A stretch of DNA of 63,152 nt, the filler included, from Octopus bimaculoides (taxonomy: Eukaryota): assembly GCF_001194135.2 (NCBI RefSeq). It is 6 parts of 6 records of this genome, joined end to end, with 100 filler letters (N's around TTAATTAATTAA, not from the genome) between each part and the next. Parts side by side here need not be neighbours in the genome. Positions count along the whole stretch, not along the records: positions 39,371 to 55,394 come from NC_068991.1; 5 more parts are not named here. The stretch is one strand, 5' to 3'. The notes beneath the pieces were generated by a model. The model ran no database searches. It was not told the DNA's origin and saw only the letters and a list, made by a program, of their open reading frames with translations. This document shows, piece by piece, positions 39,241-55,669 of the stretch. The position numbers and the translations under genes are program-made. How positions within the stretch are numbered: the first letter of the stretch is position 1; every line of letters starts with the position of its first letter.

Positions 39241-39373
39241 GCAGATGTCCAGTGCCGATGGAGGTTAAAGNNNNNNNNNNNNNNNNNNNNNNNNNNNNNN
39301 NNNNNNNNNNNNNNTTAATTAATTAANNNNNNNNNNNNNNNNNNNNNNNNNNNNNNNNNNNNNNNNNNNNATA

Positions 39374-39424
<51 letters not shown>

Positions 39425-40145
39425 GTGTGTATGTGTGTGTATATTTTTGCGTGTCTGTGTTTGTCCCCCCAAAATCGCTTGACAACCGATGGTGGTGTGT
39501 TTGCATCCCTGTAACTTAGCAGTTTGGCAAAAGAGACTGATAAAATAAGTACTAGGCTTACAAAGAATAAGTCCTGGGGTCGATTTGCTCGACTAAAGGT
39601 GGTGCTCCAGCATGGCCACAGTCAAATGACTGAAACAAGTAAAAGAGTAAAGAGAGTATATTCCTTTCTCAGATTCATGCACTAACTGAAGTGGTCACTC
39701 AGTTTTTCTACGTCCTGTAAAAGAACACAGAATGTTGGGCCTTCAGCCAGGCCTCTTGTGATACTCTTAAAGCCAGGAATTTTTCAGCACCCATTAGCAT
39801 GTGGCCACAAGTTAACGTAGACACCCTCTTAGCCCTCACACATTTGACTCAGCAGAACACTGAGGATGTGGTAGCTAGGGTGATGGGAAAGACAGGGTTG
39901 TACTACCTATTAACTGGTGTCCATTTCAACCAAAATGTCTTGCTCAAGGATATAATATAGCACTTCATCCGGGAATCACACACACAAGCTAATGATCAGG
40001 AGACTATCAGCCCTAACCATTAGGTCAGATGCCTATTCACATGATTTAATTCTTTCATTACCAGATTTCTGTCAAAATGCACTGGTTTTGTTTCAGAGAA
40101 TTTAGAAAATACTGAAGAATTTTGTAAAATAACTGTCATCATTAA

Positions 40146-40375
40146 GCAGATGTAAGGTGGCAAACTGGCAGAACCATTAGCAAGTTGGAAAAAATGTTTA
40201 GTGGCATTTCACATGTCTTTACATTCTGAGTTCAAATTCCACCAAGGTCGACTCTGCCTTTCATTCTTTCAGGGTTTATAAAATAAGCACCAGTTGAGCA
40301 CTGGGGTCGATGTAATTGACTTAACTGCCTCGCCTTAAACTTGCTGGCCTTGTGCCAAAATTTGAAACCATTATT
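40146..40375 (+). mobile_element. Meta/MESC-type SINE, CpG-decayed
   Basis: Same architecture as the 20455 copy, with most CpG converted to TpG/CpA. Confidence 0.8.
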
Positions 40376-41769
40376 AAGTAGGTGTTTGGAATATAAATTA
40401 ACATGAAATTCTGATGGAAAATTTTAATTTAGATCACTTTAAAACCTGAAGTTTGTGTCATAAAACCAGAGACAGTCCCTGGCAGGGTGATCTCAAAATA
40501 GCTAAGGGGGCCTATAGCTGCTATTTCTAGCTGGTTAAACACAGCATAGAAGCTTTCTCATTAGCTCAGTTTTACATATACTCACTTAGGTTCAGCTCAC
40601 CACTGACACATTTACACGTATTATCAGAATCCATTCTGTTCCATCACTGTCCGTCCCATGTTTGATATTTTTTTTTTGAGGCTACAAGAGTGTTACATTA
40701 TCCAAGTGTTCTCCCCTTATTTTTAAGATGTTAAAGTAGCATGTGATTGAAAATAGGACTTGCCCTCACCTATTTCCAAAGCAAAGTAATATTTCCACAC
40801 AGCCAGACATGTTTTTGCAGCATACTGGAAATGACGGCTACTCCTTCATTTACAGCTATCATGTGACATACACAGACATACAACAACACATATTTTCTCT
40901 TTCTTTTATCTTTTACTCGTTTTAGTTATTGGACTGCAGCCATGCAGGGGCACTGCCTTGAAGAATTTTTAGTTGAACAATTGACCCCAGTACTTATTTT
41001 TTCAAGACAAACTTATAGGGACATAAACAAACCAACACCAGTTACCCAGTGGTGGTGACACACACACACACACACACACACACACAAGTACACAATGGGC
41101 TTCTTTCAATATCTGTCTACCAAACCCACTCACAAAGCTTTGGTCAGCCCAAAGCAATAATAGAAGACACTTGCCAAAGGTGCCATGTAGTGGAACTGAA
41201 CCCAGAACCATGTGGATGGGAAGCAACCTTCTCACCACACACCTACACTTATGCTTACAGACACACACACACACACCTGGCTTCTTTCAATCTCCACCTG
41301 CCAAATGCACTAACAATCCTTTGGTGGGCCCAGNNNNNNNNNNNNAGCCCAAAGCAATAATAGAAGACACTTGCCAAAGGTGCCATGTAGTGGAACTGAA
41401 CCCAGAACCATGTGGATGGGAAGCAACCTTCTCACCACACACCCACACTTATGCTTACACACACACACACACACACACACCTGGCTTCTTTCAATCTCCA
41501 CCTGCCAAATGCACTAACAATCCTTTGGTGGGCCCAGGATTACAGCAGAAGACACTCGCCTAAGGTGCCACAAAATGGGACTGAACTTGAAACGATGTAG
41601 TTGGCGAGCAAACTTCTTAACCACACAGCCATGCCTGCATCTCATTGTCAACATCTATGAATAATTACTGGAAGACTAACAAGGTCATTAGAGTTTAGAA
41701 TGAATAATTTTCTCTTACTCTCCCTCCAACACCAGTGTATATATATATATCTGCGTGTTACCGCTACCC

Positions 41770-41803
<34 letters not shown>

Positions 41804-43981
41804 TCCCCTGAAGAATGAATTGAATCTGGCTATCTGGAGCACAATTGTCGTAATCAAGGAAGCCAGCCACATCCAGCTCATCAGATGGGATTCTTTACAC
41901 AAGGAACGAAATTCATGTGATAAATACTTGCCATATGTGGACCTAGCTAACAAGTAATAAATAATGAGTCAGCTTTTGGTCTGTCTCAGGGGGTGCGGTG
42001 GTGGTGGAGGACTGGGTGGAGTGGCATGGAAAGTGACAGGAGGAGGACAAGGCAAAACAGAAGAGAAGGGAGGCAGATTGTTCCCCCCAAAAAACACACA
42101 CACACATACAAGTATACAGAACAAAGACTAGAAAGAACTAATATCAAAGTAGTATCAAATGATGGTGACGATAATGATGACGATAATGATTGCAATAATG
42201 ATGATAATGGCAGTGATGGTGATGATATTATTAACGATGGTGATGGTAGTGGTGGCGATGATCATGACATTGGTGATGATGGTGATGGTGATGTTTTTGA
42301 ACATTTTGAAAGAAGAGAAACAAAAATCATTAATGTTCTCAAATTAATTGGTTGTAATATATGTCCACATGATGGTGGTGGGGGGGATTATTTACATGTC
42401 CTTAATGTAACCCTCTTTGGTTTCTTAATTTCACAAAAGACACCAGGCAGATGGCTGCGTTGACAGGGTAGCGGAGAACCACAACACTCAACCTGCTAGA
42501 AATAGCAGCCACACACCCAACTCAACAATTTTCTCTTGTCGATGATAGAAAGGACCCAAAGAAAAGTAGTCTTAGATAACACTAAAAAAAAAAGAAAAGG
42601 TAGTTCTAAGAAAAAAATAAGATAAAAAAGATGGTAGGGTCACATTTGGATTGCCGCTTGATCGTAAATCTTTCTGACTTAGAATGACCTGGATTAAGCA
42701 AAAATAACTGAAACCTTTCAAGGTAGTGAGAGCCCTTGCATGTTATGGCTGCAGTCCAATGACTGGAGCAAGCAAAAGACGCAAGCCTACAACCAGCGTT
42801 TTGAGGTTTTATTCAATAGTATTGGACCGAAAATAGCCAAATGTAAACACATTTTGCAAAATGAAGCATGTTCGCTTCCCAGCCACAGAGTTCCAAGTTC
42901 AGTCCCACTGCATGGCACCTTGAGCAAGTGCCTTCTACTGAAGCACCAGGCCAACTAAAGCCTTGGGAGTGGATTTGGAAGATGGAAACTGAAAGAAGCC
43001 CATTGTATAATGTGCGTGTGTGTGTGTGTGTGTGTGCCTGCATGCATGTGTATGTGTGTCTTTTTCTTGGCAAGGTGTGATAGTTGTAAATGATTGACAC
43101 TGCCATACATGTGCATTTCCAATATTCTGCAAAAATGTCTGGCCGGGGGAAATATTACTTTGGAGACAGATAAGTGTTGGTGAAGGTGCACGGCTTAGTG
43201 GTTAAAGGTATTCGGCTCATGATCGTAAGGTTATGAGTTCGATTCCTGGTGGTACATTGTATCCTTGAGCAAGATACTTCATCTCACATTGCTCCAGTCC
43301 ACTCAGCTGGCAAAAGTGAGTTGTACCTGTAATTCTAAAGGGCCAGCCTTGTCACATTCTGTGTCATACTGAATCACTCTGAGAACTACATTAAGGGCAC
43401 ATGTGTCTGTGGAGTGCTCAGCCACTTGCCCATTAAATTTCACTAGCAGGCTGTTCCGTTGGTCAGATCAACTGGAACCTTTTTCGTTATAATCAATGAA
43501 GCGCGAGTAAGTGTTAGTGACAAGAAGGGTATCTGGCTATACAAAATCTGCCACAATAAATTCTGTCTGACCCATGCAAGCATGGGAAAGTGGACATAAA
43601 GTGATGATGCACTATAAGAATTTAAGTAATATAGCAAATTTAACAAAGTAGGAATAATGTTTAAGTTAAGGCATGTTAATTAAGCAGTAATTATGTTGTA
43701 TTGTCAATTAGGCAGTAAGTTCAGTAGTAACTAATTAACTGTAAATAATGCATTTCTACAGAAGCAAGTAATTTTTTAAATCCAGAATATGCTTTTTAGG
43801 AATGAAACTTACAGAAAGCTAAACATTTTATTATGAGTGGGAATATGGAGAAGTAGGAAAGGAAAAACCCAACATACGTACAGCTATGAGGTCAACAAAC
43901 AGGAAGGAAGTCAGATTCCAGATCTGCCATGACCAAGCAGTCCTTTTGATCAAAGGACATCTTATTTATTTATTTATTTTT

Positions 43982-44190
43982 TTGCCCACAGGGGGCCAAA
44001 CATAGAGTGGACAAACAAGGACAGATAAAGGGATTAAGTCGATTACATCGACCCCAGTGCGTAACTGGTACTTTATTTATCGACCCCGAAAGGATGAAAG
44101 GCAAAGTCGACCTCGGCAGAATTTGAACTCAGAATGTAGCGGCAGATGAAATACCGCTAGGCATTTCGCCCGGCGTGCTAATGTTTCTTG
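43982..44190 (-). mobile_element. Meta/MESC-type SINE with a Tx1-like tail
   Basis: Matches 2631-2820, including the tail GCCCACA.GGG.C.AAACA.AGAG.GGACAAACAAGG. Confidence 0.8.
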
Positions 44191-44274
44191 GCAACGGCCC
44201 AGCATCCTGTTCAGTGGGGAGTGTTGCAAACTGGGTAACGCTCAAGCCTTAAGAGTCCCCTTTTTTTTATAATT

Positions 44275-46020
44275 AGAAGTGTGAAAATACATGGCCTAGA
44301 GGTTAGGGTGTTGCACTCACATTAATAAGACTAAGGATTTTGATTCATGGACTGGGTTCTGCACTGTGTTCTTTAGCAAAACAACTCATTTTTACATTAC
44401 TCCAGTCCATTCAGTTGTGAGTTCCATCAACAGCTGTGAAGATTATCCTCCGCTGTTCAGGCAGCTTATCTAAGGGTGTAAGTGTGAAATGGTTGGCATT
44501 AGGAAGGGCAAACCAGCTGTGAAAGCTATTTCAAAACAGACCTCACCAGCGCTGGTACCACATGAAAAGCACCCAATCCGCTTCATAAAATGGCTGGCAT
44601 TAGGAAAGACATCTAGCCATATAAACCATGCCAAAACAGGCCTCACTGATGCTGGTGCCACGTGAAAAGTACCTAGTCCACTTCATATCCAGCTGTAAAA
44701 AACATGCCAAAACAGACAGTAGAGCTTATTGTCGTCCTCTGGATTGCTAGCACCTATCAAACCATTCAACCCATGCCAGGATGGAAGATAATTATGAAAT
44801 GATTAAGGAATACACTGGCCACAAGGCATTGCCTAGCAGTTGGGGTGTTGCACTGATAATTGTAAGATTATGGTATTGATTCACAGGGTGAGTTGTGCAC
44901 TTTGTCCTTAAGCAAAACACTTCATTTTTACACTGCTCCAGTTCATTCAGTTGTGAGTTCCATCCACAGCTGGGAAGACTATATAAGGATGGAAATGTAA
45001 TCTCAAGCCATTTATATGCCATGGAAACTAGGTGAAGCACCAACCTCATGACACCTTATGCGACCTTTTTATAATTCGAAGTGTGAAGATGTGTAGGCTA
45101 GAGTGTTGCACTTGCAGTTGTAAGATTGGGGTTTTGATTCCCAGACCGGTCAGTATGTTGCATTCTTGAGCAAAACACTTTGTTTCAAGTTACTCTGCTC
45201 CAACCCACTCAGCTGTAAATTTATTCCACCAATAGTTGGGACATTAAGTTTGTGACAGATGAGTGTCCCGTTCTGCAGAGGAGTGTTATAATCTCAGAAA
45301 CTTATATGCCATGGAAACTAGGTAAAACCCCAGTCTTACAAGTCCTAGGGCTCATGATAAAGTTAAGTGTAATTGGAAGCTACTCCCAACAAGATAATGA
45401 GCAACCAGCAACAGAACTGGCCTCAAGCAACCACTCAACCCTTTACTCTGATTACTCTGCCAAATGTAATGCTTATTTATTCGCCTGACTGGCCTTCATG
45501 CCGGTGGCACGTAAAAGCACCCACTACACACTCTGAGTGGTTGGCGTTAGGAAGGGCATCCAGATGTAGAAACTCTGCCAAATCAGATTGGAGCCTGGTG
45601 TAGCCACCTGGTTCACCAGTCCTCAATCAAATTGTCCTACCCATGCTAGCATGGAAAGCGGACGTTAAACGACAATGATGAGGAGGGGGAGGAAATGATA
45701 AGGGACCAGGAGATGTGGTGATTTGCTGTTCTTGATAAGACATGTCAAGCTAAATAAAATTTCTGTCTTCTACACATACAGGCTTGTTCTTTCAGTTGCC
45801 GGTGCCACTTAAAAAGCGCCTATCCTGGTGCTGCAGAAATGCACTTGTGCCAGTGGTACATAAAAAGCACCCAACACACTCTGCAAAGTGGCTGGTGTCA
45901 GGAAGGGCATTCAGCCATAAAACCATGTCACATCAGACAATTGGAGTCTGGACAGCTACCTGCTAACCAGCTCCATGTCAAACTGCCCAACCCATGCCAG
46001 CATACAGAGTGAACAATGAT
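44275..46020 (+). mobile_element. Cluster of decayed tRNA-head SINEs (about 44275-44470, 44810-45068, 45070-45357) and RTE-tail SINEs (44480-44800, 45490-45680, 45790-46020)
   Basis: Repeated GGTGTTGCACT..CTT.AGCAAAACACTT..CTCCAGT units, and GGTTGGCGTTAGGAAGGGCATCCAG...CCCATGCTAGCATGGAAAGCGGACGTTAAACGA units. Confidence 0.7.
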
Positions 46021-46724
46021 TATTATTATTATTATTTTCAGTTAATCATGGCTTATCTCATAGCTTTGAAATTTCAATGTTGTGATTGCTTACTTTTAGA
46101 ATAATATTGTAGGATAGGTGAGAGAGGCTGGATCTGACTGGTTTGAACATAAAACAGCTAGAATATTTGGGATGGATATGTCCAGTTTAAATGCTTAAGA
46201 GTTAATATGTTGGGAGCTATAAAAGAAAAAGAAAGAAAAATAAAATCGAAGGACGAGTAGCCCTAAGGATCACAAATCATAAAACAATTACTACAAGATT
46301 TATAAGAATTGTGATCATATTTATCTGGAGAAACAAAAGAGCAGAAAAAAATTCTACAAGACAGAAGTTCGAGGAATGAAACTACAAGATGAGGTGGGGA
46401 ACAACAGTGACAAGATGAGAATTAGAAGAGAGATTATCATTATCGTCATTTTCAAGTTCACTTTTCAATGCTAGCAGGGGTCAGATGGAATTGAAGCAGA
46501 ATTTCTGCAGCTGGATGCCCTTCCTGTCACCAACACTCACTTGTTTCCATATAAAGTAATACTTTTCCATGGTTGGACAGGTTTTTCACAGAAGATTGGA
46601 AATGAAAGAAACCACTTGAATGACAGTAAAGCTTATTTACAACTTTTTCAAAAATATCATGTGATGTCAAGACAAGGAATCAGAAGCACACACACACACA
46701 CACACACATATTTACATATATATA

Positions 46725-47165
46725 AATGGGATTCTTTCAGTTTCCATTTACCAAATCCACTCACAAGGTTTTGGTTGACCTGAGGCATTAACAGAAGGCC
46801 AGTGTCTTGAAAACTGGACCTCAATGTACTAGTTTTGGCCAACATCTGTCCAATGTCAAACCCTAAGTCCTTGGCATAGTCAGGTTAAATATGACGTGAT
46901 TTTGTCCATCATACCAAGAATCCAATTTGTTCAGCTCCCGTTGTACATTCTTAACATAATCCCAGATTAAAACATCACAATCCAACATGGATAGAACAAA
47001 TATGCATGCTTTAGCCAGGTCCATTGTTTGGTACCAAGATTCTAAAATAACAGGAAGGATTTTGCTATTAGTGCTCAACATCCTTTCAAGTTTGGGATAA
47101 ATGGATAAGTGAAATCCATGCCTAAGGTGGCACGCAGTGGGATTGAACATGAAACCATGTTGTTA
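46725..47165 (-). mobile_element. CORE-type SINE split by the EXT1 fragment
   Basis: The head ends ...CCACCTTAGGCA at about 47121, and the body resumes ...CCTTCTGTTAATGCCTCAGGTCAACCAAAACCTTGTGAGTGGATTTGG at about 46802. Confidence 0.72.
46803..47120 (-). pseudogene. EXT1: Exostosin-1 (EXT1/tout-velu) pseudogene fragment, intronless and frameshifted
   Basis: Translates HGFHLSIYP...SKILPVILESWYQTMDLAKACIFVLSMLDCDVLIWDYVKNVQRELNKLDSWYDGQNHVIFNL /frameshift/ DYAKDLGFDIGQMLAKTS. Human EXT1 (recalled): NGFKVYVYP...[89 protein letters not shown]. An approximately 19-nt deletion removes YSGTWP. Confidence 0.88.
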
Positions 47166-48089
47166 AAAAGATGAGTCATATAATTTTCCTGAACTGGAAA
47201 AACAAGAGAAAAGGGCAATTTTGCTACTTTTTTCTATAAATACTTCCGATGTCTTGGTGTTTGGAGAGGGGTTGTCACACAATATAATAGCGAAAACATG
47301 ACCAATGTTAGAGACTCACTTTTGATCTCAAGGAGAGAAAGAAGACCACTCTAGACATTACATAAGTATTTCAAACAAGGAGTGGATAAGGAGCTTAAAA
47401 ACATGACAGAAGTTATATCATCCTCATCATTATTGTTTTAATATCCATTTTCTATGCTTACATGGGCCAGATGGAGTTTGTGGCAGATTTTCTGTGGTCG
47501 GTGCCCTTCCTGTTGGCAACCCCCACCTGTTTCCAAGCAAGTTGATATTTTCCCATTGCTGGACTTGATTTTGCAGAATATCAAAAATTAATGACACTGC
47601 TTGTATGACAGTGACATTCATTTATAATGATCACACAATCTCAAAACAAGGACACACACACACACATACACAATGGGCTTCTTTCAGTTTCCATCTACCA
47701 AATCCACATACAAAGCTTTGGCCAGCCTTGGGCTACAGTACAAGACACTCGCACAAGGTGCAACACAGTGGGACTGAAACCCGAAACTTCTCAACTACAC
47801 AGCCATACCAGTGCCTATAAGCCACCCCGATAAGCCAGCACCTATAGCCACCCCTGTATCTACTTCAATGACCTGGAGAACAGGTATATGGTATATTGTT
47901 AAACCAACTGACAGATTAAGTCTGCCATCAAAGAACTCACATTTATATAGATTCCAGCAACTAAATTTCATTAATGTGGCTTTGGTTATCCTGAAGTTAT
48001 GGTAGAAGATAGTTTCCTAAAGTGCTGTGCAGTGGCATTCAACACAAAACCTCATAGTGGTGGAGAAAACTTTTCCACTAATAAAACCA

Positions 48090-48684
48090 TGCTTACACCC
48101 TGAAAGCCGAGTACCATGTGAGGATGCGTGTGCTTACTCAGGTGCTGCAGCTGGCCAAAACTGTGTAGCCTTCTGTATCTGACAGACAAAGCCCCTAACA
48201 TCCAACACATCAAACCAAAGTTTGCAATGGCATCATTGTGAATCAATATATATGAAAAGGTTCCTTTAGCTACTTGAAGAATGTGGTGTCTTTGGCAGCT
48301 CCTTGGTGTCTCTCTGCGTGACCAAATCTCAAACAATAACATCCAAGAACAATGCCAAAAGCAGCTGACCATTGAAGACCAAGTCCAGCAGCACAGGCTA
48401 CAGTGGTTTAGCCAGGATGTACACTGGAAGACAACTACACAAACATTTGTGATGGCAGCAACCCACACCACTAGAGAATCTAGCACAGCATGCCAAAGAA
48501 GAAGACATGGATGAAAAAGTTGAGGAAGACCTGATGTCACAATGCCTTGACCTGAAGCTTGTTAAAGCCAGTATTATTGATCGGAAAGCATGGAATAACA
48601 TCACCAGAGTCTGTCAACCAGCAGCACCCACAGTAGCATATTGGTGGAGAGGAGAGCCTCCCCCTCCGGTCACCAACTAGGGAT
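48090..48684 (+). mobile_element. RTE LINE 3' fragment; its tail is duplicated at 49392-49548
   Basis: CLWQLLGVSLRDQISNNNIQEQC..QLTIEDQVQQHRLQWF. Confidence 0.75.
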
Positions 48685-48839
48685 TTAACCCTTTTGATAC
48701 CAACCTGGCTGAAACCACCTCTGGCTGAAACCACCTCAGGCTCTGTAGTACAAATGTCTTATTTTCATAAGTTTTGAATTAAAAACTTCCACCAAACCTT
48801 AGTCACAGTTTATGTTCCTAATACTAGCTTAATGATAAC

Positions 48840-49189
48840 TATGTGCAGCTACTGTTTATACGTCGTTCAGAGATTTATTATTGTTTGTTTACACTTTTTT
48901 GAGATCAGTGAATTTTCGTCACTGCAAAAAAAGATATAAGTATTTGCATTGGGACCCCTTCGCATTGAAGATCGGTGATTGTTGTATGCTGACGAAGGGT
49001 AAATACCCAGAAACCCGGGTCCGTGCGTATCAGATCAACGATGGGAAGGATGACTTCCCTTTGCAAATGCCGACAGGGCACAGAAAGTGCGTCAACAACC
49101 AGCTGGAGGAGATGTTCTCCTGGGGCTACAAGCTACAGTAGCATCCACCCTTAGCGGTTAGCCGCATTTAAGTGGCAAATATACTTCAC
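48840..49189 (+). mobile_element. 350-bp hammerhead-containing non-coding insertion (retrozyme-like or Penelope solo-LTR-like)
   Basis: Flanked by the direct repeat GATAAC (48834-48839 and 49190-49195). It interrupts a TTAA MITE and is richer in GC and CpG than its surroundings. Confidence 0.7.
48983..49027 (+). ncRNA. Type I hammerhead ribozyme motif (minimal, palindromic stem III)
   Basis: TGTATG-CTGACGA-A-GGGT(aaat)ACCC-A-GAAA-CCCGGG-TC-CGTGCG. Core CUGANGA and GAAA are intact, the cleavage triplet is GUC (cut after 49021), and stem I is 6 bp (Watson-Crick plus G.U). The base of stem II is an A.A mismatch. Confidence 0.78.
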
Positions 49190-50115
49190 GATAACAATGT
49201 TATTTTACTAAATTCTTAAACATTTTTAAAATTAATTGAAAGAAACACAGAGCATCTCAAAATAAATACAATAACGAAAGGGTTAAGAAAAAGAAGAGAC
49301 TAAAAGAATGTTGTTAGCTTTCTTAACAGTAGCTGAAGGAACTTCAGTATCTTGTCAACGATCAACCCAAGGTCTTTCTGTTCTAAAAAACAAATTGAGG
49401 AAGACCCAAAGTCACAATGCTTCGACCTCAAACTTGCTAAGGCCAGTGCCACAAATTGAAAAGCATGGAGTTCTATCATCACCAGAATCTGTCATCCAGC
49501 AGCATATTGGTTGAGAGGATAGACTTCCCCTCTGGTAACCAGCTAGGCACTTTAGAAGAAGAGACTCAACGAATGCCATTAGCTTTCTTAACTGTAGTTT
49601 ATGGAAATTCAGTATCTTCTCAATGATCACGCCATGATATTTCTGTTCTAAATTAGCTTTTCAAGATATGGACTGACATTTGATAAGAATGCATGGCCTT
49701 ACATTTGATAAGAAAAAAAAAGAAGTAAATTTATTTTAATGTCTAGTCAGATGGAAGCGGAGTAGTGTCCTTGAACTTTCCAAGGAATCAAAGACAAATG
49801 GTTGGGTGGAGGACAGAGGAGGAAGAAGCTTCAACTGCTGCAATTCATCAATATATTGAACATAAATATTTGGAACAGAGCGGAATCGGTTAAAGTGATC
49901 CAAGGACCATCCAGGTGGTGTGGTGGTAGTAAGTTTGGTGACAGAATTAAGACAATGGTCAGTAAAGAGTGCAGCACATGGATTTCAGCATCACTTAAGG
50001 TTTGTTCACATTGCTTGTAGGCACAGATAGGGCTGTATGGTTTAGAAGTCTGTTTCCCAACCACATGGTTTCAAGTTCAATCCCATTCCATGGCACACTG
50101 GGCAGATTTCTTTAA

Positions 50116-50328
50116 CGCTTTAGCATTCAAACCAGCCATATCCAGACCAAATATTCTACTTGTTTTATGCCAAAATAAGCCATATCCAACCTCTCATACC
50201 TAACCTACAATTTCATTCTAAAAGAATAAACAATCACATCTTGAAGCTACAAAATAACACATGATTAATTCAAAACAATATGAATTAGTAGACATTATAT
50301 TTGACAGAATAATCTGACTGCTAAAGGT
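50116..50328. mobile_element. piggyBac-type (TTAA) MITE inserted in a CORE-SINE
   Basis: TTAA|CGCTTTAGCA...TGCTAAAGGT|TTAA; a partial inverted relative lies at 46030-46202. Confidence 0.75.
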
Positions 50329-51099
50329 TTAACTAAAGCCCCAGAACAACCAAAGCCTTGTAAGTGGGTTCGGTAGACAGAAACTGAAAGACTTGTGTAT
50401 CTGTGTGTGTGTGTGTGTGTGCGCACGTGCACACGCGTGCATGAGTTCACATGTCTGAGAATGTGTGCATGTGATAGTGTTCACGTGTGAGACTACATGC
50501 GTGCAAGTGTGAATGTGAGAGTGAGAGAAAAGCAGACACAGGTACACACGTACAAACGCTTTGGCATCTTTCAGTTTTTGTCTACCAAATACACTCACAG
50601 GGCTTTGGTCAGCCTACGTAGAGTAGAAGATACCTGCCCAAGGTACAAGACAGTGGGATGTAAGTTTTTTAACCACACAGCCTTGCCTATAATAATAATG
50701 GTTTCAGATTGTGGCACAAGGCTAACGGATTTGAGGGAGGGAATAAGGGGATTACATCAATCCCAGTATTCAAATGGAACTTATTTTGATCAACCCCAAA
50801 AGAATGAAAGGCAAAGTCAAACTTGCAGTTCTATATTTAAGAGATGAGGAATTATGTACATTATTTATATTATTTACATTATTTACATTTGACGGACAAA
50901 TTATTTTCCTTCAGACTGTTTCCAAAGTTTTATGTTCGTTTCTCTATTATTAATTTTACTCACGTCTCTATCTTAATAGAAACTAATGGATAAAGAAATC
51001 AAGCTACATAAACAAACGGCAGCAAAACCGTTCAGAAATTAAATCACACTAACATATTTTTATAATATGAGGACAAATATCCGTCAAATGTAAATAATA

Positions 51100-51262
51100 G
51101 GCGTAGGTGTGGCTGTGTGGTAAGTAGCTTGCTTACAAACCACATGGTTCCAGGTTCAGTCCCACTGCGTGGTACCTTGTGCAAGTGTCTTCTACTATAG
51201 CCTCGGGCCGACCAAAGCCTTGTGAGTGGATTTGGTAGACGGAAACTGAAAGAAGCCCGTCG

Positions 51263-51295
<33 letters not shown>

Positions 51296-51500
51296 GTATA
51301 TGTTTGTGTGTCTGTGTTTGTCCTCCCACCTCCAACATCGCTTGACAACCGGTGCTGGTGTGTTTACGTCCCCATAACTTAGCGGTTCGGCAAAAGAGAC
51401 CGATAGGCTTACAAAGAATAAGTCCTGGGGGTCGATTTGCTTAACTAAAGGTGGTGCTCCAGCATGGCTACAGTCAAGTGACTGAAACAAATAAAAGAAT
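51100..51500 (+). mobile_element. CORE-type SINE, complete copy
   Basis: Same head, core, microsatellite and tail layout. Partial copies at 17870-17990(-), 23200-23360(-), 25430-25550(-), 26700-27030(+), 39400-39655(+), 41000-41640(-), 42870-43010(+), 47650-47820(-), 50560-50690(-), 55170-55395(+), 55500-55670(-). Confidence 0.88.
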
Positions 51501-51867
51501 AAATATAAATAAAGTCAACCTTGGCAAAATTTGAACTGAATGTAAAGACAGATGAAATACCGCTAAGCATTTTGCCCGGCATGCTAATGACTCTGGCAGC
51601 TCACTGCCTTAAAAGTAATTTTAGAAGGTATTTTGCATGATGCTTTTACCAAACTAATGCTTTGAAGCAAAATCATCACAAGAGCACTCAGAGAGTGCAA
51701 ATCTCCACCAAGGCAACACCAACGTCCTCTCAACGATTAACGGGAGATAATTGTTAATTCTCAGATTCTGGACTCATTCTTCAACAATATAGCGTTGCTA
51801 ATCATTAATAAAACCCCTAGTAGAATGTTCAACTTGCGGCATAAATAATAATAATAATACTGCTTTC

Positions 51868-52077
51868 CACTGAAGGAACAAAGCCTAAAATTTCAGGGAA
51901 GGGGACTAGTCAGTTACATCGGCCCCAGTGTTTCACTGGTACTTAATTTATTGACCCCGAAAGGATGAAAGGCAAAGTCAACCTTGGCAGAATTTGAACT
52001 CAGAACATAGCAAAAAGGTGAAATACCACTAAGCATTTAGCCCAGTGAGCTAACGATTCTGCAAGCTTGCTGCCTTA
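51868..52077 (-). mobile_element. Meta/MESC-type SINE, CpG-decayed
   Basis: Collinear with 2428-2630. Confidence 0.8.
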
Positions 52078-52140
52078 ATAATAATAATAATAAAAATAAT
52101 AGTAGTAGTAGTAGTAGTAATAATAATAATAATAATAATG

Positions 52141-52176
<36 letters not shown>

Positions 52177-52212
52177 GTAATAGTAGTAGTAATAATAATA
52201 ATAATAATAATA

Positions 52213-52462
52213 GAAGTTCAAAAGATAGTGCTCATGGGAACTGCCCATATCCTACGTAAAATACTGTCTATGTGATCTCAAATTTTAAAGCAAACATAAT
52301 TTTCTTATGGTTTCTTAAACATTCACTAGAACAAAACTGTACAAATCCAAATATATGGTACCCTAGGCATAACACCTACATGAACTTCTAACTTGTCTCT
52401 TGAAGTCTCTGGGTGAGACTTGGATCCAACTTGTACAAATGCAAAATAAAAGTCAAACATAA
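52213..52462 (+). mobile_element. R4/Dong-clade LINE 3' end inserted in (TAA)n
   Basis: EVQKIVLMGTAHILRKILSM* followed by a 3' UTR; (TAA)n on both sides. Confidence 0.85.
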
Positions 52463-52522
<60 letters not shown>

Positions 52523-52524
<2 letters not shown>

Positions 52525-53040
52525 TCCTGCAAACTGGTACAGATACCATCCTGAGCTAGTTGTTGAGGGCAAAAATGCCATCATCCTCTGGGATTTTCCA
52601 GTCAACTGACATAATGATCCAGGTTAATAAACCAGACATAATTATTAGAGGCTGGGAAGAAAATACTTGTAGACTAATAGATGTAAGTTTCCCAACTGAT
52701 AAAAATATATCTATAAGGGAATTTGTCAAACTTAGTAAATATAAATACCTGGAAATTGAAATTAAAACTGTCCCTATTATTGTAGTTGCTCTTGGTATGA
52801 TAAAAAAAAAAAAATGGATGTCCGAAATATCTAGACAACATCTTGGAAGAACCATATCACAAAGAAATGCAAAAGATTGTGCTGACAATAATTATATGCT
52901 TCCTTAGAAAAACCCTATCAATTTAGATATTTGTGTTGCATTATATGAAAGTATCTCTGAACTGCCCTCCCCAAGCTTTCGGTCATATTTCAACATCTCT
53001 TAACCTTCACTTGTCCTAGGGTGCTGGATGTGTCTTGGCT
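52523..53040 (+). mobile_element. R4/Dong-clade LINE restriction-like endonuclease fragment
   Basis: NKPDIIIR....TCRLIDVSFPTDKNISIREFVKLSKYKYLEIEI..VPIIVVALGMIKK, then frameshifted EMQKIVL...LRKTLSI*. Confidence 0.88.
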
Positions 53041-53055
53041 AGTGATTGCATCAGT

Positions 53056-53435
53056 GGAGGCGCAATGGCCCAGTGGTTATGGCAGCTGACTCGCGGTCAT
53101 AGGATCACGGTTTCGATTCCCAGACCGGGCATTGCGAGTGTTTATTGAGCGAAAACACCTAAAGCTCCACGAGGCTCCGGCAGGGGATGGTGGCGAACTC
53201 TGCTGTACTCCTTCACCACAACTTTCTCTCACTCTTACTTCCTGTTTCTGTTGTACCTGTAATTCAAAGGGTCAGCCTTGTCACACTGTGTCACGCTGAA
53301 TATCCTCGAGAACTACGTTAAGGATACACGTGTCTGTGAAGTGCTCAGCCACTTGCACGTTAATTTTACGAGCAGGCTGTTCCGTTGATCGGATCAACTG
53401 GAACCCTCGACGTCGTAAGCGACGGAGTGCCAACA
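53056..53435 (+). mobile_element. tRNA-derived SINE, long-head variant
   Basis: Head GGAGGCGCAATGGCCCAGTGG...TTTCGATTCCC; the 3' body is shared with the 4144 family. Confidence 0.85.
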
Positions 53436-53957
53436 NNNNNNNNNNNNNNNNNNNNNNNNNNNNNNNNNNNNNNNNNNNNNNNNNNNNNNNNNNNNNNNNN
53501 NNNNNNNNNNNNNNNNNNNNNNNNNNNNNNNNNNNNNNNNNNNNNNNNNNNNNNNNNNNNNNNNNNNNNNNNNNNNNNNNNNNNNNNNNNNNNNNNNNNN
53601 NNNNNNNNNNNNNNNNNNNNNNNNNNNNNNNNNNNNNNNNNNNNNNNNNNNNNNNNNNNNNNNNNNNNNNNNNNNNNNNNNNNNNNNNNNNNNNNNNNNN
53701 NNNNNNNNNNNNNNNNNNNNNNNNNNNNNNNNNNNNNNNNNNNNNNNNNNNNNNNNNNNNNNNNNNNNNNNNNNNNNNNNNNNNNNNNNNNNNNNNNNNN
53801 NNNNNNNNNNNNNNNNNNNNNNNNNNNNNNNNNNNNNNNNNNNNNNNNNNNNNNNNNNNNNNNNNNNNNNNNNNNNNNNNNNNNNNNNNNNNNNNNNNNN
53901 NNNNNNNNNNNNNNNNNNNNNNNNNNNNNNNNNNNNNNNNNNNNNNNNNNNNNNNNN

Positions 53958-54290
53958 CACGCTCAAAATGGTGTATTTTACGTGCCACCTGCACAGGAGC
54001 CAGTTCAGCGGCACTGGCAGCGATCTTGCTTGCATGTCTTTACACATACCATCCGGCACAAGTGCCAGGGAGGCGATGCTGGGTACAGGTGCCATGACGA
54101 TTTCGCTTTCGCTTGCCCCAACAGGTCTTCGCAAGCCGAGTTTCGTGTCCGATGAAGGAGATGACGTTGGCATGGGTGCCAGTCGTCGAATCTAATTTGA
54201 TTTCGATTTCACTTGCCTCAACAGGTCTTCGCAAGCGGAGTTTAGTGTCCAATGAAGGAAGATATGCATAAGTGGGCTGGCTGAGGCCTT
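53958..54290 (-). mobile_element. RTE-tail SINE-related repeat with an internal tandem duplication
   Basis: Contains the reverse complement of GGTGGCACGTAAAA seen at 45505; a 61-nt unit is duplicated at 54097-54158 and 54199-54259. Confidence 0.55.
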
Positions 54291-55669
54291 AGATTTAGGT
54301 CTCATTTGGCTTGCCGGGTCTTCTCATGTGACATATACACAATTTAGTTTTGTCCTTTTACGTTCAGAGTTCAAATTCTTTTCCTCTTAACAGGAATTGA
54401 TAAAATAAATACCAAATACTAGGGTCAAGGAAAGAAATACTATTGTTGCTATGACTGTATCCTCCTCCTGCCCCACTTCCCCCACAACACCCAGTCATGT
54501 GCTTATGTTAGAAATAATTGTTATTTAACATAAAGAGCAGAAGCAGTAACTATTGACTTGTAAAAAAGCCTCCTTGTAATAGTGTGGTGGGGATGTTCAG
54601 CTGGTGAACTTTGATAGTTTGGTAACTAAGCAACAATCAAAGGATAAGCTCCAATATAAGGGACAGCCCTGGGTGGAAGGAACTACATGAAAGGGTTAAG
54701 CAACAAGGGAATGAAAGGGGACATAGTAGGAATAATAAGACATGGAAGACTAACTGCTTTAGGTAGTCTGGGACAATAATGGTAACTGTTACAGTGATAG
54801 GAGAGACAGCGGCCCTTTGCTGTTTTATCTTCAGTGGAGTCCACTATAGTGCTAACATTCAGGACAAACACCTCGTGAGTAAATTTGGTAACAGAAACTG
54901 AAAGAAGCCCGGATGATTTGTTTATGACGATCAAATGTTTCTGTAGACATAGGCTCACTACTGCCATCAGATCGACATTACCTGTACAGGTGCAACTGGG
55001 TGCCGCATGTCAGATATCGAAATGATTGTAGAGCAACGTGAAATGAAGTGCTTTGCTCAAGAACACAACACAATGCCCAGTCTGGGAATCGAACCTACGA
55101 TCTTGCAATCGTGAGTGCAATATCCTAACCACTTAGCCATGCGCCTTTAGATAGATAGACAGATAGAGATAGGTGCAGGCATGGCTGTGTGGTAAGAAGC
55201 TTGCTTCCAAACCACAGGGTTCCAGGTTCAGTCCCACTGCATGGCACCTTGAGCAAGTGTCTTCTATATAGCCTTGGGCCAATCAAAACCTTGTGAGTGG
55301 ATTTGGTAGACGGAAACTGAAAGAAGCTCGTCGTATATATATGAGTGTGTGTGTGTGTGTGTACATATTTATGTGTGTATGTCTTAGTGTCTGTNNNNNN
55401 NNNNNNNNNNNNNNNNNNNNNNNNNNNNNNNNNNNNNNTTAATTAATTAANNNNNNNNNNNNNNNNNNNNNNNNNNNNNNNNNNNNNNNNNNNNTATATA
55501 TATATATACGACGGGCTTCTTTCAGTTTCCGTCTACCAAATCCACTCACAAGGCTTTGGTCGGCCCGAGGCTATAGTAGAAGACACTTGCCCAAGGTGCC
55601 ACGCAATGGGACTGAACCCGGAACCATGTGGTTGGTGAGCAAGCTACTTACCACACAGCCACTCCTGTG

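What the first reader, a model, noticed from the sequence alone, without database searches (positions are those of the whole stretch)
46725..47165. EXT1 gene fragment captured inside a SINE
Seen: about 318 bp encoding roughly 105 residues of the EXT1 N-terminal glycosyltransferase domain lies between the head (..CCACCTTAGGCA) and the continuation (..CCTTCT..GCCTCAGGTCAACC) of one CORE-type SINE, in the same orientation, with no obvious TSD. It has a frameshifting deletion and substitutions R>W, P>L and R>C, which are typical of CpG deamination. Inference: a chimera made by RT template switching between SINE RNA and EXT1 mRNA, or by templated break repair. If the chimera was amplified, SINEs would be ferrying host-gene pieces.
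Basis: partly seen in the sequence, partly recalled or inferred. Interest (0 to 1): 0.75.

Follow-up and report, generated by a model that had tools for sequence, protein, structure and literature searches.

The report
Decayed EXT1 gene piece inside SINE
A dead, roughly 320-base piece of the EXT1 (exostosin-1) coding sequence really does sit inside one copy of an octopus-type short interspersed repeat, most likely as filler DNA picked up when a chromosome break in that repeat was repaired; it is a genuine curiosity, probably not a new way of moving genes.

Summary
On the minus strand, 321 nt (47118 to 46798) separate two halves of one tRNA-derived, CORE-type SINE copy. The halves align colinearly with eight other copies in the piece, and exactly 5 nt of the SINE (AGTGT) are missing at the insertion point. 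At least 311 nt of the insert encode an exostosin fragment. It matches human EXT1 (E=3.7e-17) far better than EXT2 (1e-4).

The fragment is a pseudogene. It has a frameshifting deletion of about 19 nt, three smaller deletions, a stop codon, and 7 of about 35 family-invariant residues replaced, several by CpG-type transitions. Its CpG count is 2 against 11.5 expected.

The insert has no target-site duplication, poly(A) tail or terminal inverted repeats. No other EXT1 sequence lies within 7 kb. Its last 11 nt look like an inverted copy of the SINE target site (shuffle P about 0.007), but other readings of that junction exist.

Best reading, at 0.6: an EXT1 cDNA, mRNA or DNA fragment was captured during break repair in an already resident SINE. 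Reverse-transcriptase template switching remains possible, at about 0.2.

Amplification of the chimera could not be tested. The octopus EXT1 parent gene could not be retrieved with these tools.

The parts
47119..47165 (-). SINE head remnant: B-box region up to the start of the CORE motif, ending ...CACCTTAGGCA. The A-box part of the head is missing or unrecognisable.
   Evidence: 38/44 identical to the consensus of 7 other copies in the piece. Upstream of 47165 there is no resemblance to the A-box region.
46809..47118 (-). EXT1-derived pseudogene fragment. Frame A runs 47117-46881 and frame B 46884-46807. An approximately 19-nt frameshifting deletion lies at 46881-46884, and the frame A stop is at 46865-46863.
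   Evidence: PDB EXT1 E=3.7e-17 against EXT2 1.3e-4. Pfam PF03016 E=2.3e-5. 118 exostosin hits. 45-50% identity to 116 full-length EXT1 proteins, and 28 of 45 invariant columns kept. CpG 2 observed against 11.5 expected.
46798..46808 (-). 11 nt, AAGACACTGGC. Possibly an inverted copy of the SINE target site GCAAGTGTCTT (10/11), that is, templated filler. Alternatively it is the decayed end of the EXT1 piece.
   Evidence: Shuffle test: a 10/11 or better match of either insert end to the 30-nt target region, in either orientation, in 0.7% of 20,000 trials. Alternative parses are recorded in note 2.
46727..46797 (-). The SINE resumes here: rest of the CORE domain and body (CTTCTGTTAATGCCTCAGGTCAACCAAAACCTTGTGAGTGGATTTGGTAAATGGAAACTGAAAGAATCCCAT).
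   Evidence: 60/72 identical to the local consensus. BLAST matches to other copies stop at 46797-46799.
46431..46726 (-). Internal (TA)n(TG)n microsatellite and the long 3' part of the SINE, ending in a GAT/GATAAT-type tail.
   Evidence: Colinear with the neighbouring copy at 47400-47720, 67% identity over 405 aligned nt.
47166..47175 (-). Candidate target-site duplication of the whole SINE, 5' copy (CTCATCTTTT in SINE sense).
   Evidence: Direct repeat family D1, 9/10 identical to 46410-46419. About 3% expected by chance. It may instead be decayed SINE head.
46410..46419 (-). Candidate target-site duplication of the whole SINE, 3' copy (CTCATCTTGT). A third copy lies at 46384-46393.
47400..47830 (-). 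Uninterrupted neighbouring copy of the same long SINE subfamily, same orientation. Used as the comparator that shows what the interrupted copy looked like.

Best explanation
A CORE-type, tRNA-derived SINE copy was already resident at this locus. It is 5'-truncated or decayed at its head.

A chromosome break then occurred inside its CORE motif (CTTGGGCA/AGTGT/CTTCT). The break was sealed by end joining, and the repair incorporated a roughly 310-nt internal piece of EXT1 coding sequence as filler. That piece was most plausibly a cDNA or RNA-templated copy of EXT1 mRNA, and less likely genomic DNA.

Five SINE bases were lost. Possibly a short stretch was copied in inverted orientation from the target site before ligation, which is the signature of synthesis-dependent or polymerase-theta-type end joining.

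The piece has no function. It has since decayed as neutral, methylated DNA.

Shown: the anatomy, the EXT1 identity and the decay.
Inferred: the order of events, the repair pathway and the RNA origin of the filler.
For: 1. The two SINE parts are one element. They are colinear with the consensus and lack exactly 5 nt. They diverge similarly from the consensus, at 86% and 83% identity. They are colinear over about 400 nt with the neighbouring copy. A candidate 9/10 target-site duplication brackets the whole element.
2. The insert has none of the marks of retrotransposition or transposition. It has no target-site duplication, poly(A), mRNA 3' end or terminal inverted repeats. It is an internal stretch of coding sequence, matching positions 87-201 of the 720-residue EXT1 chain 7sch_A.
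3. Its features match experimentally observed capture of partial mRNA copies at breaks. One example is 310 nt of Inadl mRNA, with no poly(A), short microhomologies and small deletions (PMC4516963).
4. An 11-nt inverted copy of the target sits at the 3' junction (10/11, shuffle P about 0.007). Snap-back or templated inserts of this kind are described for alternative end joining (PMC2943611 and PMC4912351, listed).
5. This SINE family fills roughly a tenth of the piece. A random break landing in one is unremarkable.
6. No further EXT1 sequence lies within 7 kb on either side. So this is not a gene or a long pseudogene invaded by a SINE.
Against: - The donor EXT1 sequence of this species could not be obtained. 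Junction microhomology, exact insert ends and RNA versus DNA origin are therefore untested.
- The inverted 11-mer was noticed after the fact. It has two alternative parses: a 3-nt GCC duplication with a 6-nt deletion, or EXT1 reading on as D-T-G-L-L-L-M, corresponding to the family's DVSLPLF after a 9-nt deletion.
- The insert is not demonstrably younger than the SINE. The rough divergences are about 9% for the insert (from 7 of 35 invariant residues lost) and 14-17% for the SINE, with overlapping error. Simultaneous arrival is not excluded.
- No orthologous 'SINE without insert' allele was available.
Confidence: 0.6

Rival explanations
1. Template switching by a LINE reverse transcriptase during the retrotransposition that created this very SINE copy. 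The enzyme copied SINE RNA from the 3' end and jumped to EXT1 mRNA inside the CORE region. It copied about 310 nt, then jumped back to the SINE RNA 5 nt upstream of where it left. This gives a tripartite chimera inserted in one step.
For: - SINE and EXT1 share the same sense orientation.
- A candidate target-site duplication brackets the whole composite.
- The ages of insert and SINE are not distinguishable.
- Double template jumps by LINE reverse transcriptases are documented (PMC2104539 and bioRxiv 10.1101/2025.02.02.635956, both listed).
- A return close to the departure point is physically conceivable, because the nascent cDNA stays paired to the SINE RNA.
Against: - Known chimeric retrocopies replace the 5' partner. 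They do not nest a foreign piece inside one template.
- A return to within 5 nt needs special pleading.
- Same-sense orientation has a 50% chance expectation.
- An inverted target copy at the junction, if real, needs a strand switch that this model does not provide.
Confidence: 0.2
2. Replication-based template switching (MMBIR or fork-stalling type). A stalled fork in the SINE copied about 310 nt of genomic EXT1 DNA and returned. On this reading the donor is DNA, possibly on the same chromosome.
For: - It gives the same anatomy as break repair: a small deletion, no target-site duplication, and possibly a short inverted templated stretch.
- Templated insertions of this type are described (PMC8421209, listed).
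Against: - No EXT1 exon lies within 7 kb.
- A purely exonic 310-nt template is a small target in a genome that is mostly non-coding.
Confidence: 0.1
3. The chimera is one member of a SINE subfamily that carries the EXT1 piece and has been amplified. On this reading SINEs transduce host coding sequence.
For: None directly. It simply cannot be excluded, because no cephalopod genome was searchable with these tools.
Against: - The piece holds one copy of the insert against about 10 SINE copies in 16 kb.
- This copy lacks the A-box region needed for Pol III transcription.
- The 1.84-billion-protein library holds nothing more than 58% identical to the fragment. The window's own ORFs are absent from that collection too, so this last point is weak.
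Confidence: 0.05
4. Assembly artefact, or capture by a DNA transposon (Helitron or Pack-type).
For: The piece is a gapped scaffold with runs of N elsewhere.
Against: - Both junctions lie within 321 nt of each other in unique sequence.
- The fragment is a decayed pseudogene, not a mis-joined live exon.
- There are no terminal inverted repeats, no target-site duplication and no Helitron-type ends.
Confidence: 0.03

Closest known systems
Capture of partial mRNA/cDNA or other DNA at double-strand breaks (RT-product-mediated break repair, Ono et al. 2015, PMC4516963; templated sequence insertions)
   Same: The insert is an internal piece of a messenger, about 300 nt long, with no poly(A) and no target-site duplication. 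A few target bases are lost, and junction overlap of up to 3 nt (GCA) is possible.
   Different: This case is natural, ancient and fixed in a cephalopod assembly rather than induced. The donor was not identified, so neither reverse transcription (missing introns) nor microhomology could be shown.
Chimeric retrocopies made by LINE reverse-transcriptase template switching (U6-L1 type; tripartite chimeras, PMC2104539)
   Same: Copies of different RNAs are fused in the same sense. There may be one target-site duplication around the whole unit.
   Different: Here the foreign piece is nested inside one SINE, which resumes 5 nt from the interruption. Described chimeras are end-to-end fusions, and none is reported to have SINE on both sides.
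Synthesis-dependent microhomology-mediated / polymerase-theta end joining with templated inserts (PMC2943611, PMC4912351)
   Same: A short insert copied in reverse complement from sequence at the break.
   Different: It is only 11 nt, has one mismatch and has alternative parses. It is combined with a long foreign filler.
Processed pseudogene (LINE-mediated retrocopy of an mRNA)
   Same: Intron-free coding sequence decaying neutrally outside its gene.
   Different: The fragment has no 3' UTR, poly(A) tail or target-site duplication. It covers only about 107 of about 740 codons, from the middle of the N-terminal domain.
CORE-SINEs, of which OR1 of octopus is a listed member (PMC4824008)
   Same: The host element has a tRNA-like head, and the motif CCTTGGGCAAGT followed by ...AGCCTC.GG resembles the CORE of MIR. 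That comparison is from my memory of the MIR consensus. The element is highly repeated in the piece.
   Different: Identity with OR1 was not tested, because no reference sequence was available. Copies here have an internal (TG)n tract and at least two different 3' parts.

Membership tests
Exostosin-1 (EXT1) coding sequence, GT47 N-terminal domain | Significant similarity to the exostosin GT47 domain | tested here: met
   PDB EXT1 E=3.7e-17. 118 hits in the representative library, best 6.6e-18. Pfam PF03016 E=2.3e-5 at 24.3 bits, below the 33.4-bit cut-off, as expected for a third of a domain that has decayed.
Exostosin-1 (EXT1) coding sequence, GT47 N-terminal domain | Closer to EXT1 than to EXT2 or other exostosins | tested here: met
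   65.8 bits to EXT1 against 25.4 bits to EXT2. Named library relatives are exostosin-1 or exostosin-1-like.
Exostosin-1 (EXT1) coding sequence, GT47 N-terminal domain | Intact reading frame and conserved residues (a live gene or exon) | tested here: not met
   There is a frameshift, a stop codon and four deletions. 17 of 45 columns that are at least 95% conserved are lost. No neighbouring EXT1 exons.
CORE-type tRNA-derived SINE | Dispersed multicopy element with a shared head and central domain | tested here: met
   About 10 copies in 16 kb, 74-94% identical to their consensus.
CORE-type tRNA-derived SINE | tRNA-related head with A and B boxes | tested here: inconclusive
   The consensus shows TGGCTGTGTGGTAAG and GGTTCCAGGTTCAGTCC, read by eye as A-box-like and B-box-like. 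ARAGORN and Rfam call nothing. The interrupted copy lacks the A-box part.
CORE-type tRNA-derived SINE | CORE central domain shared with MIR and OR1 | not testable with these tools
   No reference CORE, MIR or OR1 sequence is available in the tools. The resemblance (CCTTGGGCAAGT...) is recalled from memory. OR1 of octopus is listed as a CORE-SINE in PMC4824008.
Filler DNA / templated insertion at a repaired double-strand break | No target-site duplication and no poly(A) at the insert; small loss of target sequence | tested here: met
   5 nt (AGTGT) are lost, with no duplication and no A-run.
Filler DNA / templated insertion at a repaired double-strand break | Microhomology between the donor and the break ends | not testable with these tools
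   The donor EXT1 of this species could not be retrieved. The left junction is ambiguous over up to 3 nt (GCA).
Filler DNA / templated insertion at a repaired double-strand break | The target pre-existed without the insert | not testable with these tools
   This needs orthologous loci of other octopods. No cephalopod genome is held in the searchable collections.
Chimeric retrocopy by reverse-transcriptase template switching | Parts in the same sense; one target-site duplication and one 3' tail for the whole unit | tested here: inconclusive
   Same sense is confirmed. The candidate 9/10 duplication at 47166-47175 and 46410-46419 has about a 3% chance expectation and could be SINE head sequence.
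Chimeric retrocopy by reverse-transcriptase template switching | End-to-end order: 5' partner RNA, then the 3' part of the LINE or SINE | tested here: not met
   The foreign piece is nested, and the same SINE continues on both sides with a 5-nt gap.
Processed pseudogene | mRNA 3' end with poly(A), flanked by a target-site duplication | tested here: not met
   The insert ends inside the coding sequence at ...SSFQ, with no A-run and no duplication.

The most novel reading that the evidence does not exclude
The EXT1 piece entered a transcriptionally active SINE source copy or its RNA. The chimera was then retrotransposed, so a SINE subfamily in octopods carries and spreads a host exon-sized coding fragment. 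The locus seen here would be one 5'-truncated daughter.

A related reading concerns the ends of the piece. Both ends coincide, within 1-4 nt, with intron positions seen in EXT1 genes of other animals. So the piece might be one or more whole spliced exons, which would point to an RNA-level recombination route.
Probability: 0.06. Interest if true: 0.7.

Novelty: new member of a known kind. Interest (0 to 1): 0.27.

Why it matters
As it stands, this is a clean natural example of a gene fragment fossilised inside a repeat. It shows that break-repair capture of coding sequence, well documented in mouse zygotes and cultured cells, also leaves traces in a cephalopod germline.

It would matter more in two cases:
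- The parent gene shows that the piece spans spliced introns. That would be evidence for RNA-templated repair in the octopus germline.
- The same junctions recur at other loci. That would mean SINE-mediated spread of host exons, a route to exon shuffling.

Neither is shown here.

Tried and rejected
**1. Finding the parental octopus EXT1.**
- Three word-index protein searches were run: the fragment itself (no hit), a full-length EXT1 (top 120 hits with no mollusc named), and the fragment with family-invariant motifs restored (best 58%).
- One exhaustive representative search was run (best 58% identity).
- Contigs of the five most fragment-like relatives were fetched (L001-L005). None is cephalopod. 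They have no octopus SINE and show nucleotide similarity only in short conserved stretches.

**2. Finding this locus in other assemblies.** Exact look-up of five window ORFs found nothing on record. The collection therefore cannot speak to amplification or to read support.

**3. Flanking EXT1 exons.** tblastn with 118 exostosins against 39371-55394 found nothing outside 46800-47150 at E<0.05.

**4. Other readings considered and rejected.**
- Transposon capture: no terminal inverted repeats, duplications or Helitron-type ends.
- Splicing-based fusion through cryptic sites in the SINE CORE (CAA|GTGTCT ... CTATAG|CC, read from the consensus): the observed SINE break points do not match those sites.
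- Extension of EXT1 homology into the SINE head (FNPTAC resembling CFDxSxC; some tblastn alignments run to 47147-47267): the DNA there is 86% identical to the SINE consensus, so the protein resemblance is chance.

**5. tRNA and Rfam scans of the piece.** Nothing found.

**6. Not attempted.** I did not scan the viral, metagenome or prokaryote-genome collections for the junctions, because they do not hold cephalopod genomes.

Full report
**What is there**

Read on the minus strand, the region is a SINE whose sequence is interrupted once.
- The head runs from about 47165 and ends ...CCCACTGCGTGCCACCTTAGGCA at 47119.
- The element resumes at 46797 with CTTCTGTTAATGCCTCAGGTCAACCAAAACCTTGTGAGTGGATTTGGTAAATGGAAACTGAAAGAATCCCAT.
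- It then continues through a (TA)n(TG)n tract and a roughly 250-nt 3' part, to a GAT/GATAAT-type tail near 46431.

About ten copies of the same head and body module lie in the 16-kb piece. I aligned seven of them with the interrupted copy, replacing the insert by five Ns. The two parts fall exactly in register with the consensus ...CACCTTGGGCA-AGTGT-CTTCTACTATAGCC..., so five SINE bases and no more are missing.
- Head and body are 86% (38/44) and 83% (60/72) identical to that consensus.
- BLAST matches from other copies stop at 46797-46799.
- An uninterrupted copy of the same long subfamily lies 235 bp away at 47400-47830, in the same orientation. It is colinear with the interrupted copy over about 400 nt at 67% identity.
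- A 10-nt direct repeat, 9/10 identical, brackets the whole element at 47166-47175 and 46410-46419. It is a candidate target-site duplication, but it could be decayed head sequence.

I therefore treat the two SINE parts as one old insertion. The refuting condition 'two different insertions' is not met.

**The insert**

The 321 nt between the SINE parts (47118-46798) translate on the SINE's own strand in two frames.
- Frame A: GFHLSIYPKLERMLSTNSKILPVILESWYQTMDLAKACIFVLSMLDCDVLIWDYVKNVQRELNKLDSWYDGQNHVIFNL.
- Frame B: PDYAKDLGFDIGQMLAKTSTLRSSFQ.

Joined, the two frames give these matches:
- Human exostosin-1 at E=3.7e-17, against exostosin-2 at 1.3e-4.
- 118 exostosins in an exhaustive search of 1.84 billion representatives.
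- Pfam Exostosin_GT47 at E=2.3e-5, below Pfam's own cut-off. That is unsurprising for one third of a domain that has decayed.

So the best hit is exostosin, specifically the EXT1 type.

**The fragment is a pseudogene**
- Where every relative reads [11 protein letters not shown], it reads FNL/PDY, with the two frames overlapping. This is a deletion of about 19 nt that shifts the frame and leads to a stop at 46865-46863.
- It also lacks the DT of LDTLDRD, the A of GQAMLAK, and two residues after YP.
- Of 45 columns at least 95% conserved among 116 full-length EXT1 proteins, it keeps 28. Of the roughly 35 such columns that are not deleted, 7 are substituted.
Each is one CpG transition from the conserved R, P and R. 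R>Q (CAA) and E>K fit the same pattern.
- The insert has 2 CpG where 11.5 are expected. The SINE is as depleted (2 against 14.8). The whole piece has 226 against 628.
- The fragment is 45-50% identical to EXT1 proteins that are on average 67% identical to one another in this region. So it is equally far from all of them, as expected for neutral decay.

**Surroundings**

tblastn with all 118 exostosin relatives finds no other EXT1-like stretch in 39371-55394. This is neither a gene nor a long retrocopy into which a SINE jumped.
- The insert is single-copy in the piece, and both junctions are unique.
- The insert has no target-site duplication, no A-run and no terminal inverted repeats.

**The junctions**

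*Left junction (SINE sense).* It reads ...CACCTTAGGCA|TGGATTTCAC. Up to three bases (GCA) could belong to either partner, since relatives often have H or N before GF.

*Right junction.* It reads ...AGTTTTC|AAGACACTGGC|CTTCTGTT.
- The 11 nt AAGACACTGGC are the reverse complement of GCcAGTGTCTT, which is 10/11 identical to the SINE target GCAAGTGTCTT.
- This stretch spans the five 'missing' bases plus three retained on each side.
- In 20,000 shuffles of the two insert ends, a match this good to the 30-nt target region, in either orientation, occurred in 0.7%.
- I read this as probable templated filler copied from the opposite strand of the target. That is a known by-product of synthesis-dependent or polymerase-theta end joining (PMC2943611, PMC4912351).

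This reading was found after the fact, and two other parses exist (note 2):
- a 6-nt deletion with a 3-nt GCC duplication;
- EXT1 reading on as DTGLLLM, corresponding to the family's DVSLPLF after a 9-nt deletion, and overlapping the SINE by CTTC.

Only the parental sequence can decide between them.

**Mechanism**

The simplest account has three steps.
1. A resident SINE suffered a break in its CORE motif.
2. End joining sealed the break and took up an EXT1-derived fragment as filler.
3. Five bases were lost, and possibly 11 were copied in inverted orientation.

This matches what is seen when breaks are made experimentally in mouse zygotes. There, internal pieces of mRNAs are captured (for example 310 nt of Inadl), without poly(A) or target-site duplication and often with 1-5 nt of microhomology (PMC4516963). 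SINEs of this family occupy roughly a tenth of the piece, so a break inside one needs no special explanation.

Whether the filler was cDNA, RNA-templated or genomic DNA is not shown. That it is coding sequence cannot be used as an argument, because only coding filler would have been noticed.

Template switching by a reverse transcriptase during the SINE's own insertion is not excluded.
- In its favour: the orientation is the same, a duplication may bracket the whole unit, and my rough ages overlap (about 9% divergence for the insert against 14-17% for the SINE).
- Against it: it needs two or three jumps with a return to the same RNA within 5 nt. Described chimeric retrocopies are end-to-end fusions, not nested ones (PMC2104539).

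I give it about 0.2.

**Amplification**

I could not test amplification. The searchable DNA collections hold no cephalopod genome. The protein collection does not contain even this window's own ORFs. Nothing more than 58% identical to the fragment exists among the representatives. The copy seen here lacks the A-box part of the head, so it is not itself a plausible source gene.

**The parent gene**

All attempts to retrieve octopus EXT1 failed. Contigs of the most fragment-like relatives are not cephalopod.

They did show one thing worth recording. In other animals this part of EXT1 is split by introns at varying places, and both ends of the octopus fragment fall within 1-4 nt of such places.
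- An acceptor lies just before NGFYVYVYP in L001.
- A donor lies inside the R codon of NYR|PGFD in L003.
- The three loci examined each have different intron positions. With about eight known positions in 480 nt, coincidence is quite possible.

**Comparison with what is known, and verdict**

- The host element is a CORE-type SINE by motif, recalled from memory. OR1 of octopus is listed as a CORE-SINE in PMC4824008.
- The insert is EXT1-derived.
- The event belongs with filler-DNA or templated insertions at repaired breaks.

It is a real feature, and a tidy natural example of a known kind of event in a new lineage. It has no sign of function or spread. Interest is modest unless the orthologue test or a genome-wide junction search shows otherwise.

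Noticed in passing
window 46863-47150 (-): A 95-codon ORF starts at an ATG inside the SINE head and reads in frame into the EXT1 fragment (MFNPTACHLRHGFHLS...). The SINE-encoded FNPTAC mimics EXT1's CFDxSxC motif, so some tblastn alignments run into the SINE. The DNA there is 86% SINE consensus, so this is chance.
   Followed up: yes
L001 10060-10070; L003 615-630; L002 2255-2270 and 2538-2545: EXT1 genes of other, unidentified animals have introns at lineage-specific positions in this region. Both ends of the octopus fragment lie within 1-4 nt of two of them: an acceptor before NGFYVYVYP and a donor inside the R codon of NYR|PGFD. This may be coincidence, or a hint that the fragment is one or more whole exons.
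   Followed up: partly
window 47400-47830 (-): A second copy of the same long SINE subfamily lies only 235 bp upstream of the interrupted copy, in the same orientation and 67% identical to it. It also lacks about 20 nt of the head relative to other copies.
   Followed up: partly
window ~48300-48690 (+), and 49290-49650: Broken reading frames here read LGVSLRDQISN..., GRP..., and ...EEDLMSQCLDLKLVKASIIDRKAWNNIT. From memory, they resemble the C-terminal end of an RTE-like LINE ORF2. Part of the stretch is repeated about 900 bp downstream (48514-48681 against 49389-49547 at 74%; 49291-49387 against 49556-49652 at 82%).
   Followed up: no
window 41058-41631: Two SINE head and body modules in tandem (41072-41445 against 41257-41631, 78% over 398 nt), with a short run of N between them. 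This may be a real tandem duplication or a scaffolding join.
   Followed up: no
window 41993-42463 (+), tandem repeat 42215-42289: A 156-codon ORF rich in Asp and Gly arises from a 21-bp tandem repeat (GATGGTGATGGTAGTGGTGAC, 3.6 copies). It is probably not a gene.
   Followed up: no
window ~53400-53900; 52076-52212; 52459-52522: An assembly gap (a run of N of about 500 nt) and two long trinucleotide arrays: (TAA)n with 46 copies and (ATA)n with 22 copies.
   Followed up: no
window 39371-55394: The whole piece is strongly CpG-depleted (226 observed against 628 expected) and is a mosaic of repeats. No convincing protein-coding gene was seen among ORFs of 85 codons or more.
   Followed up: partly
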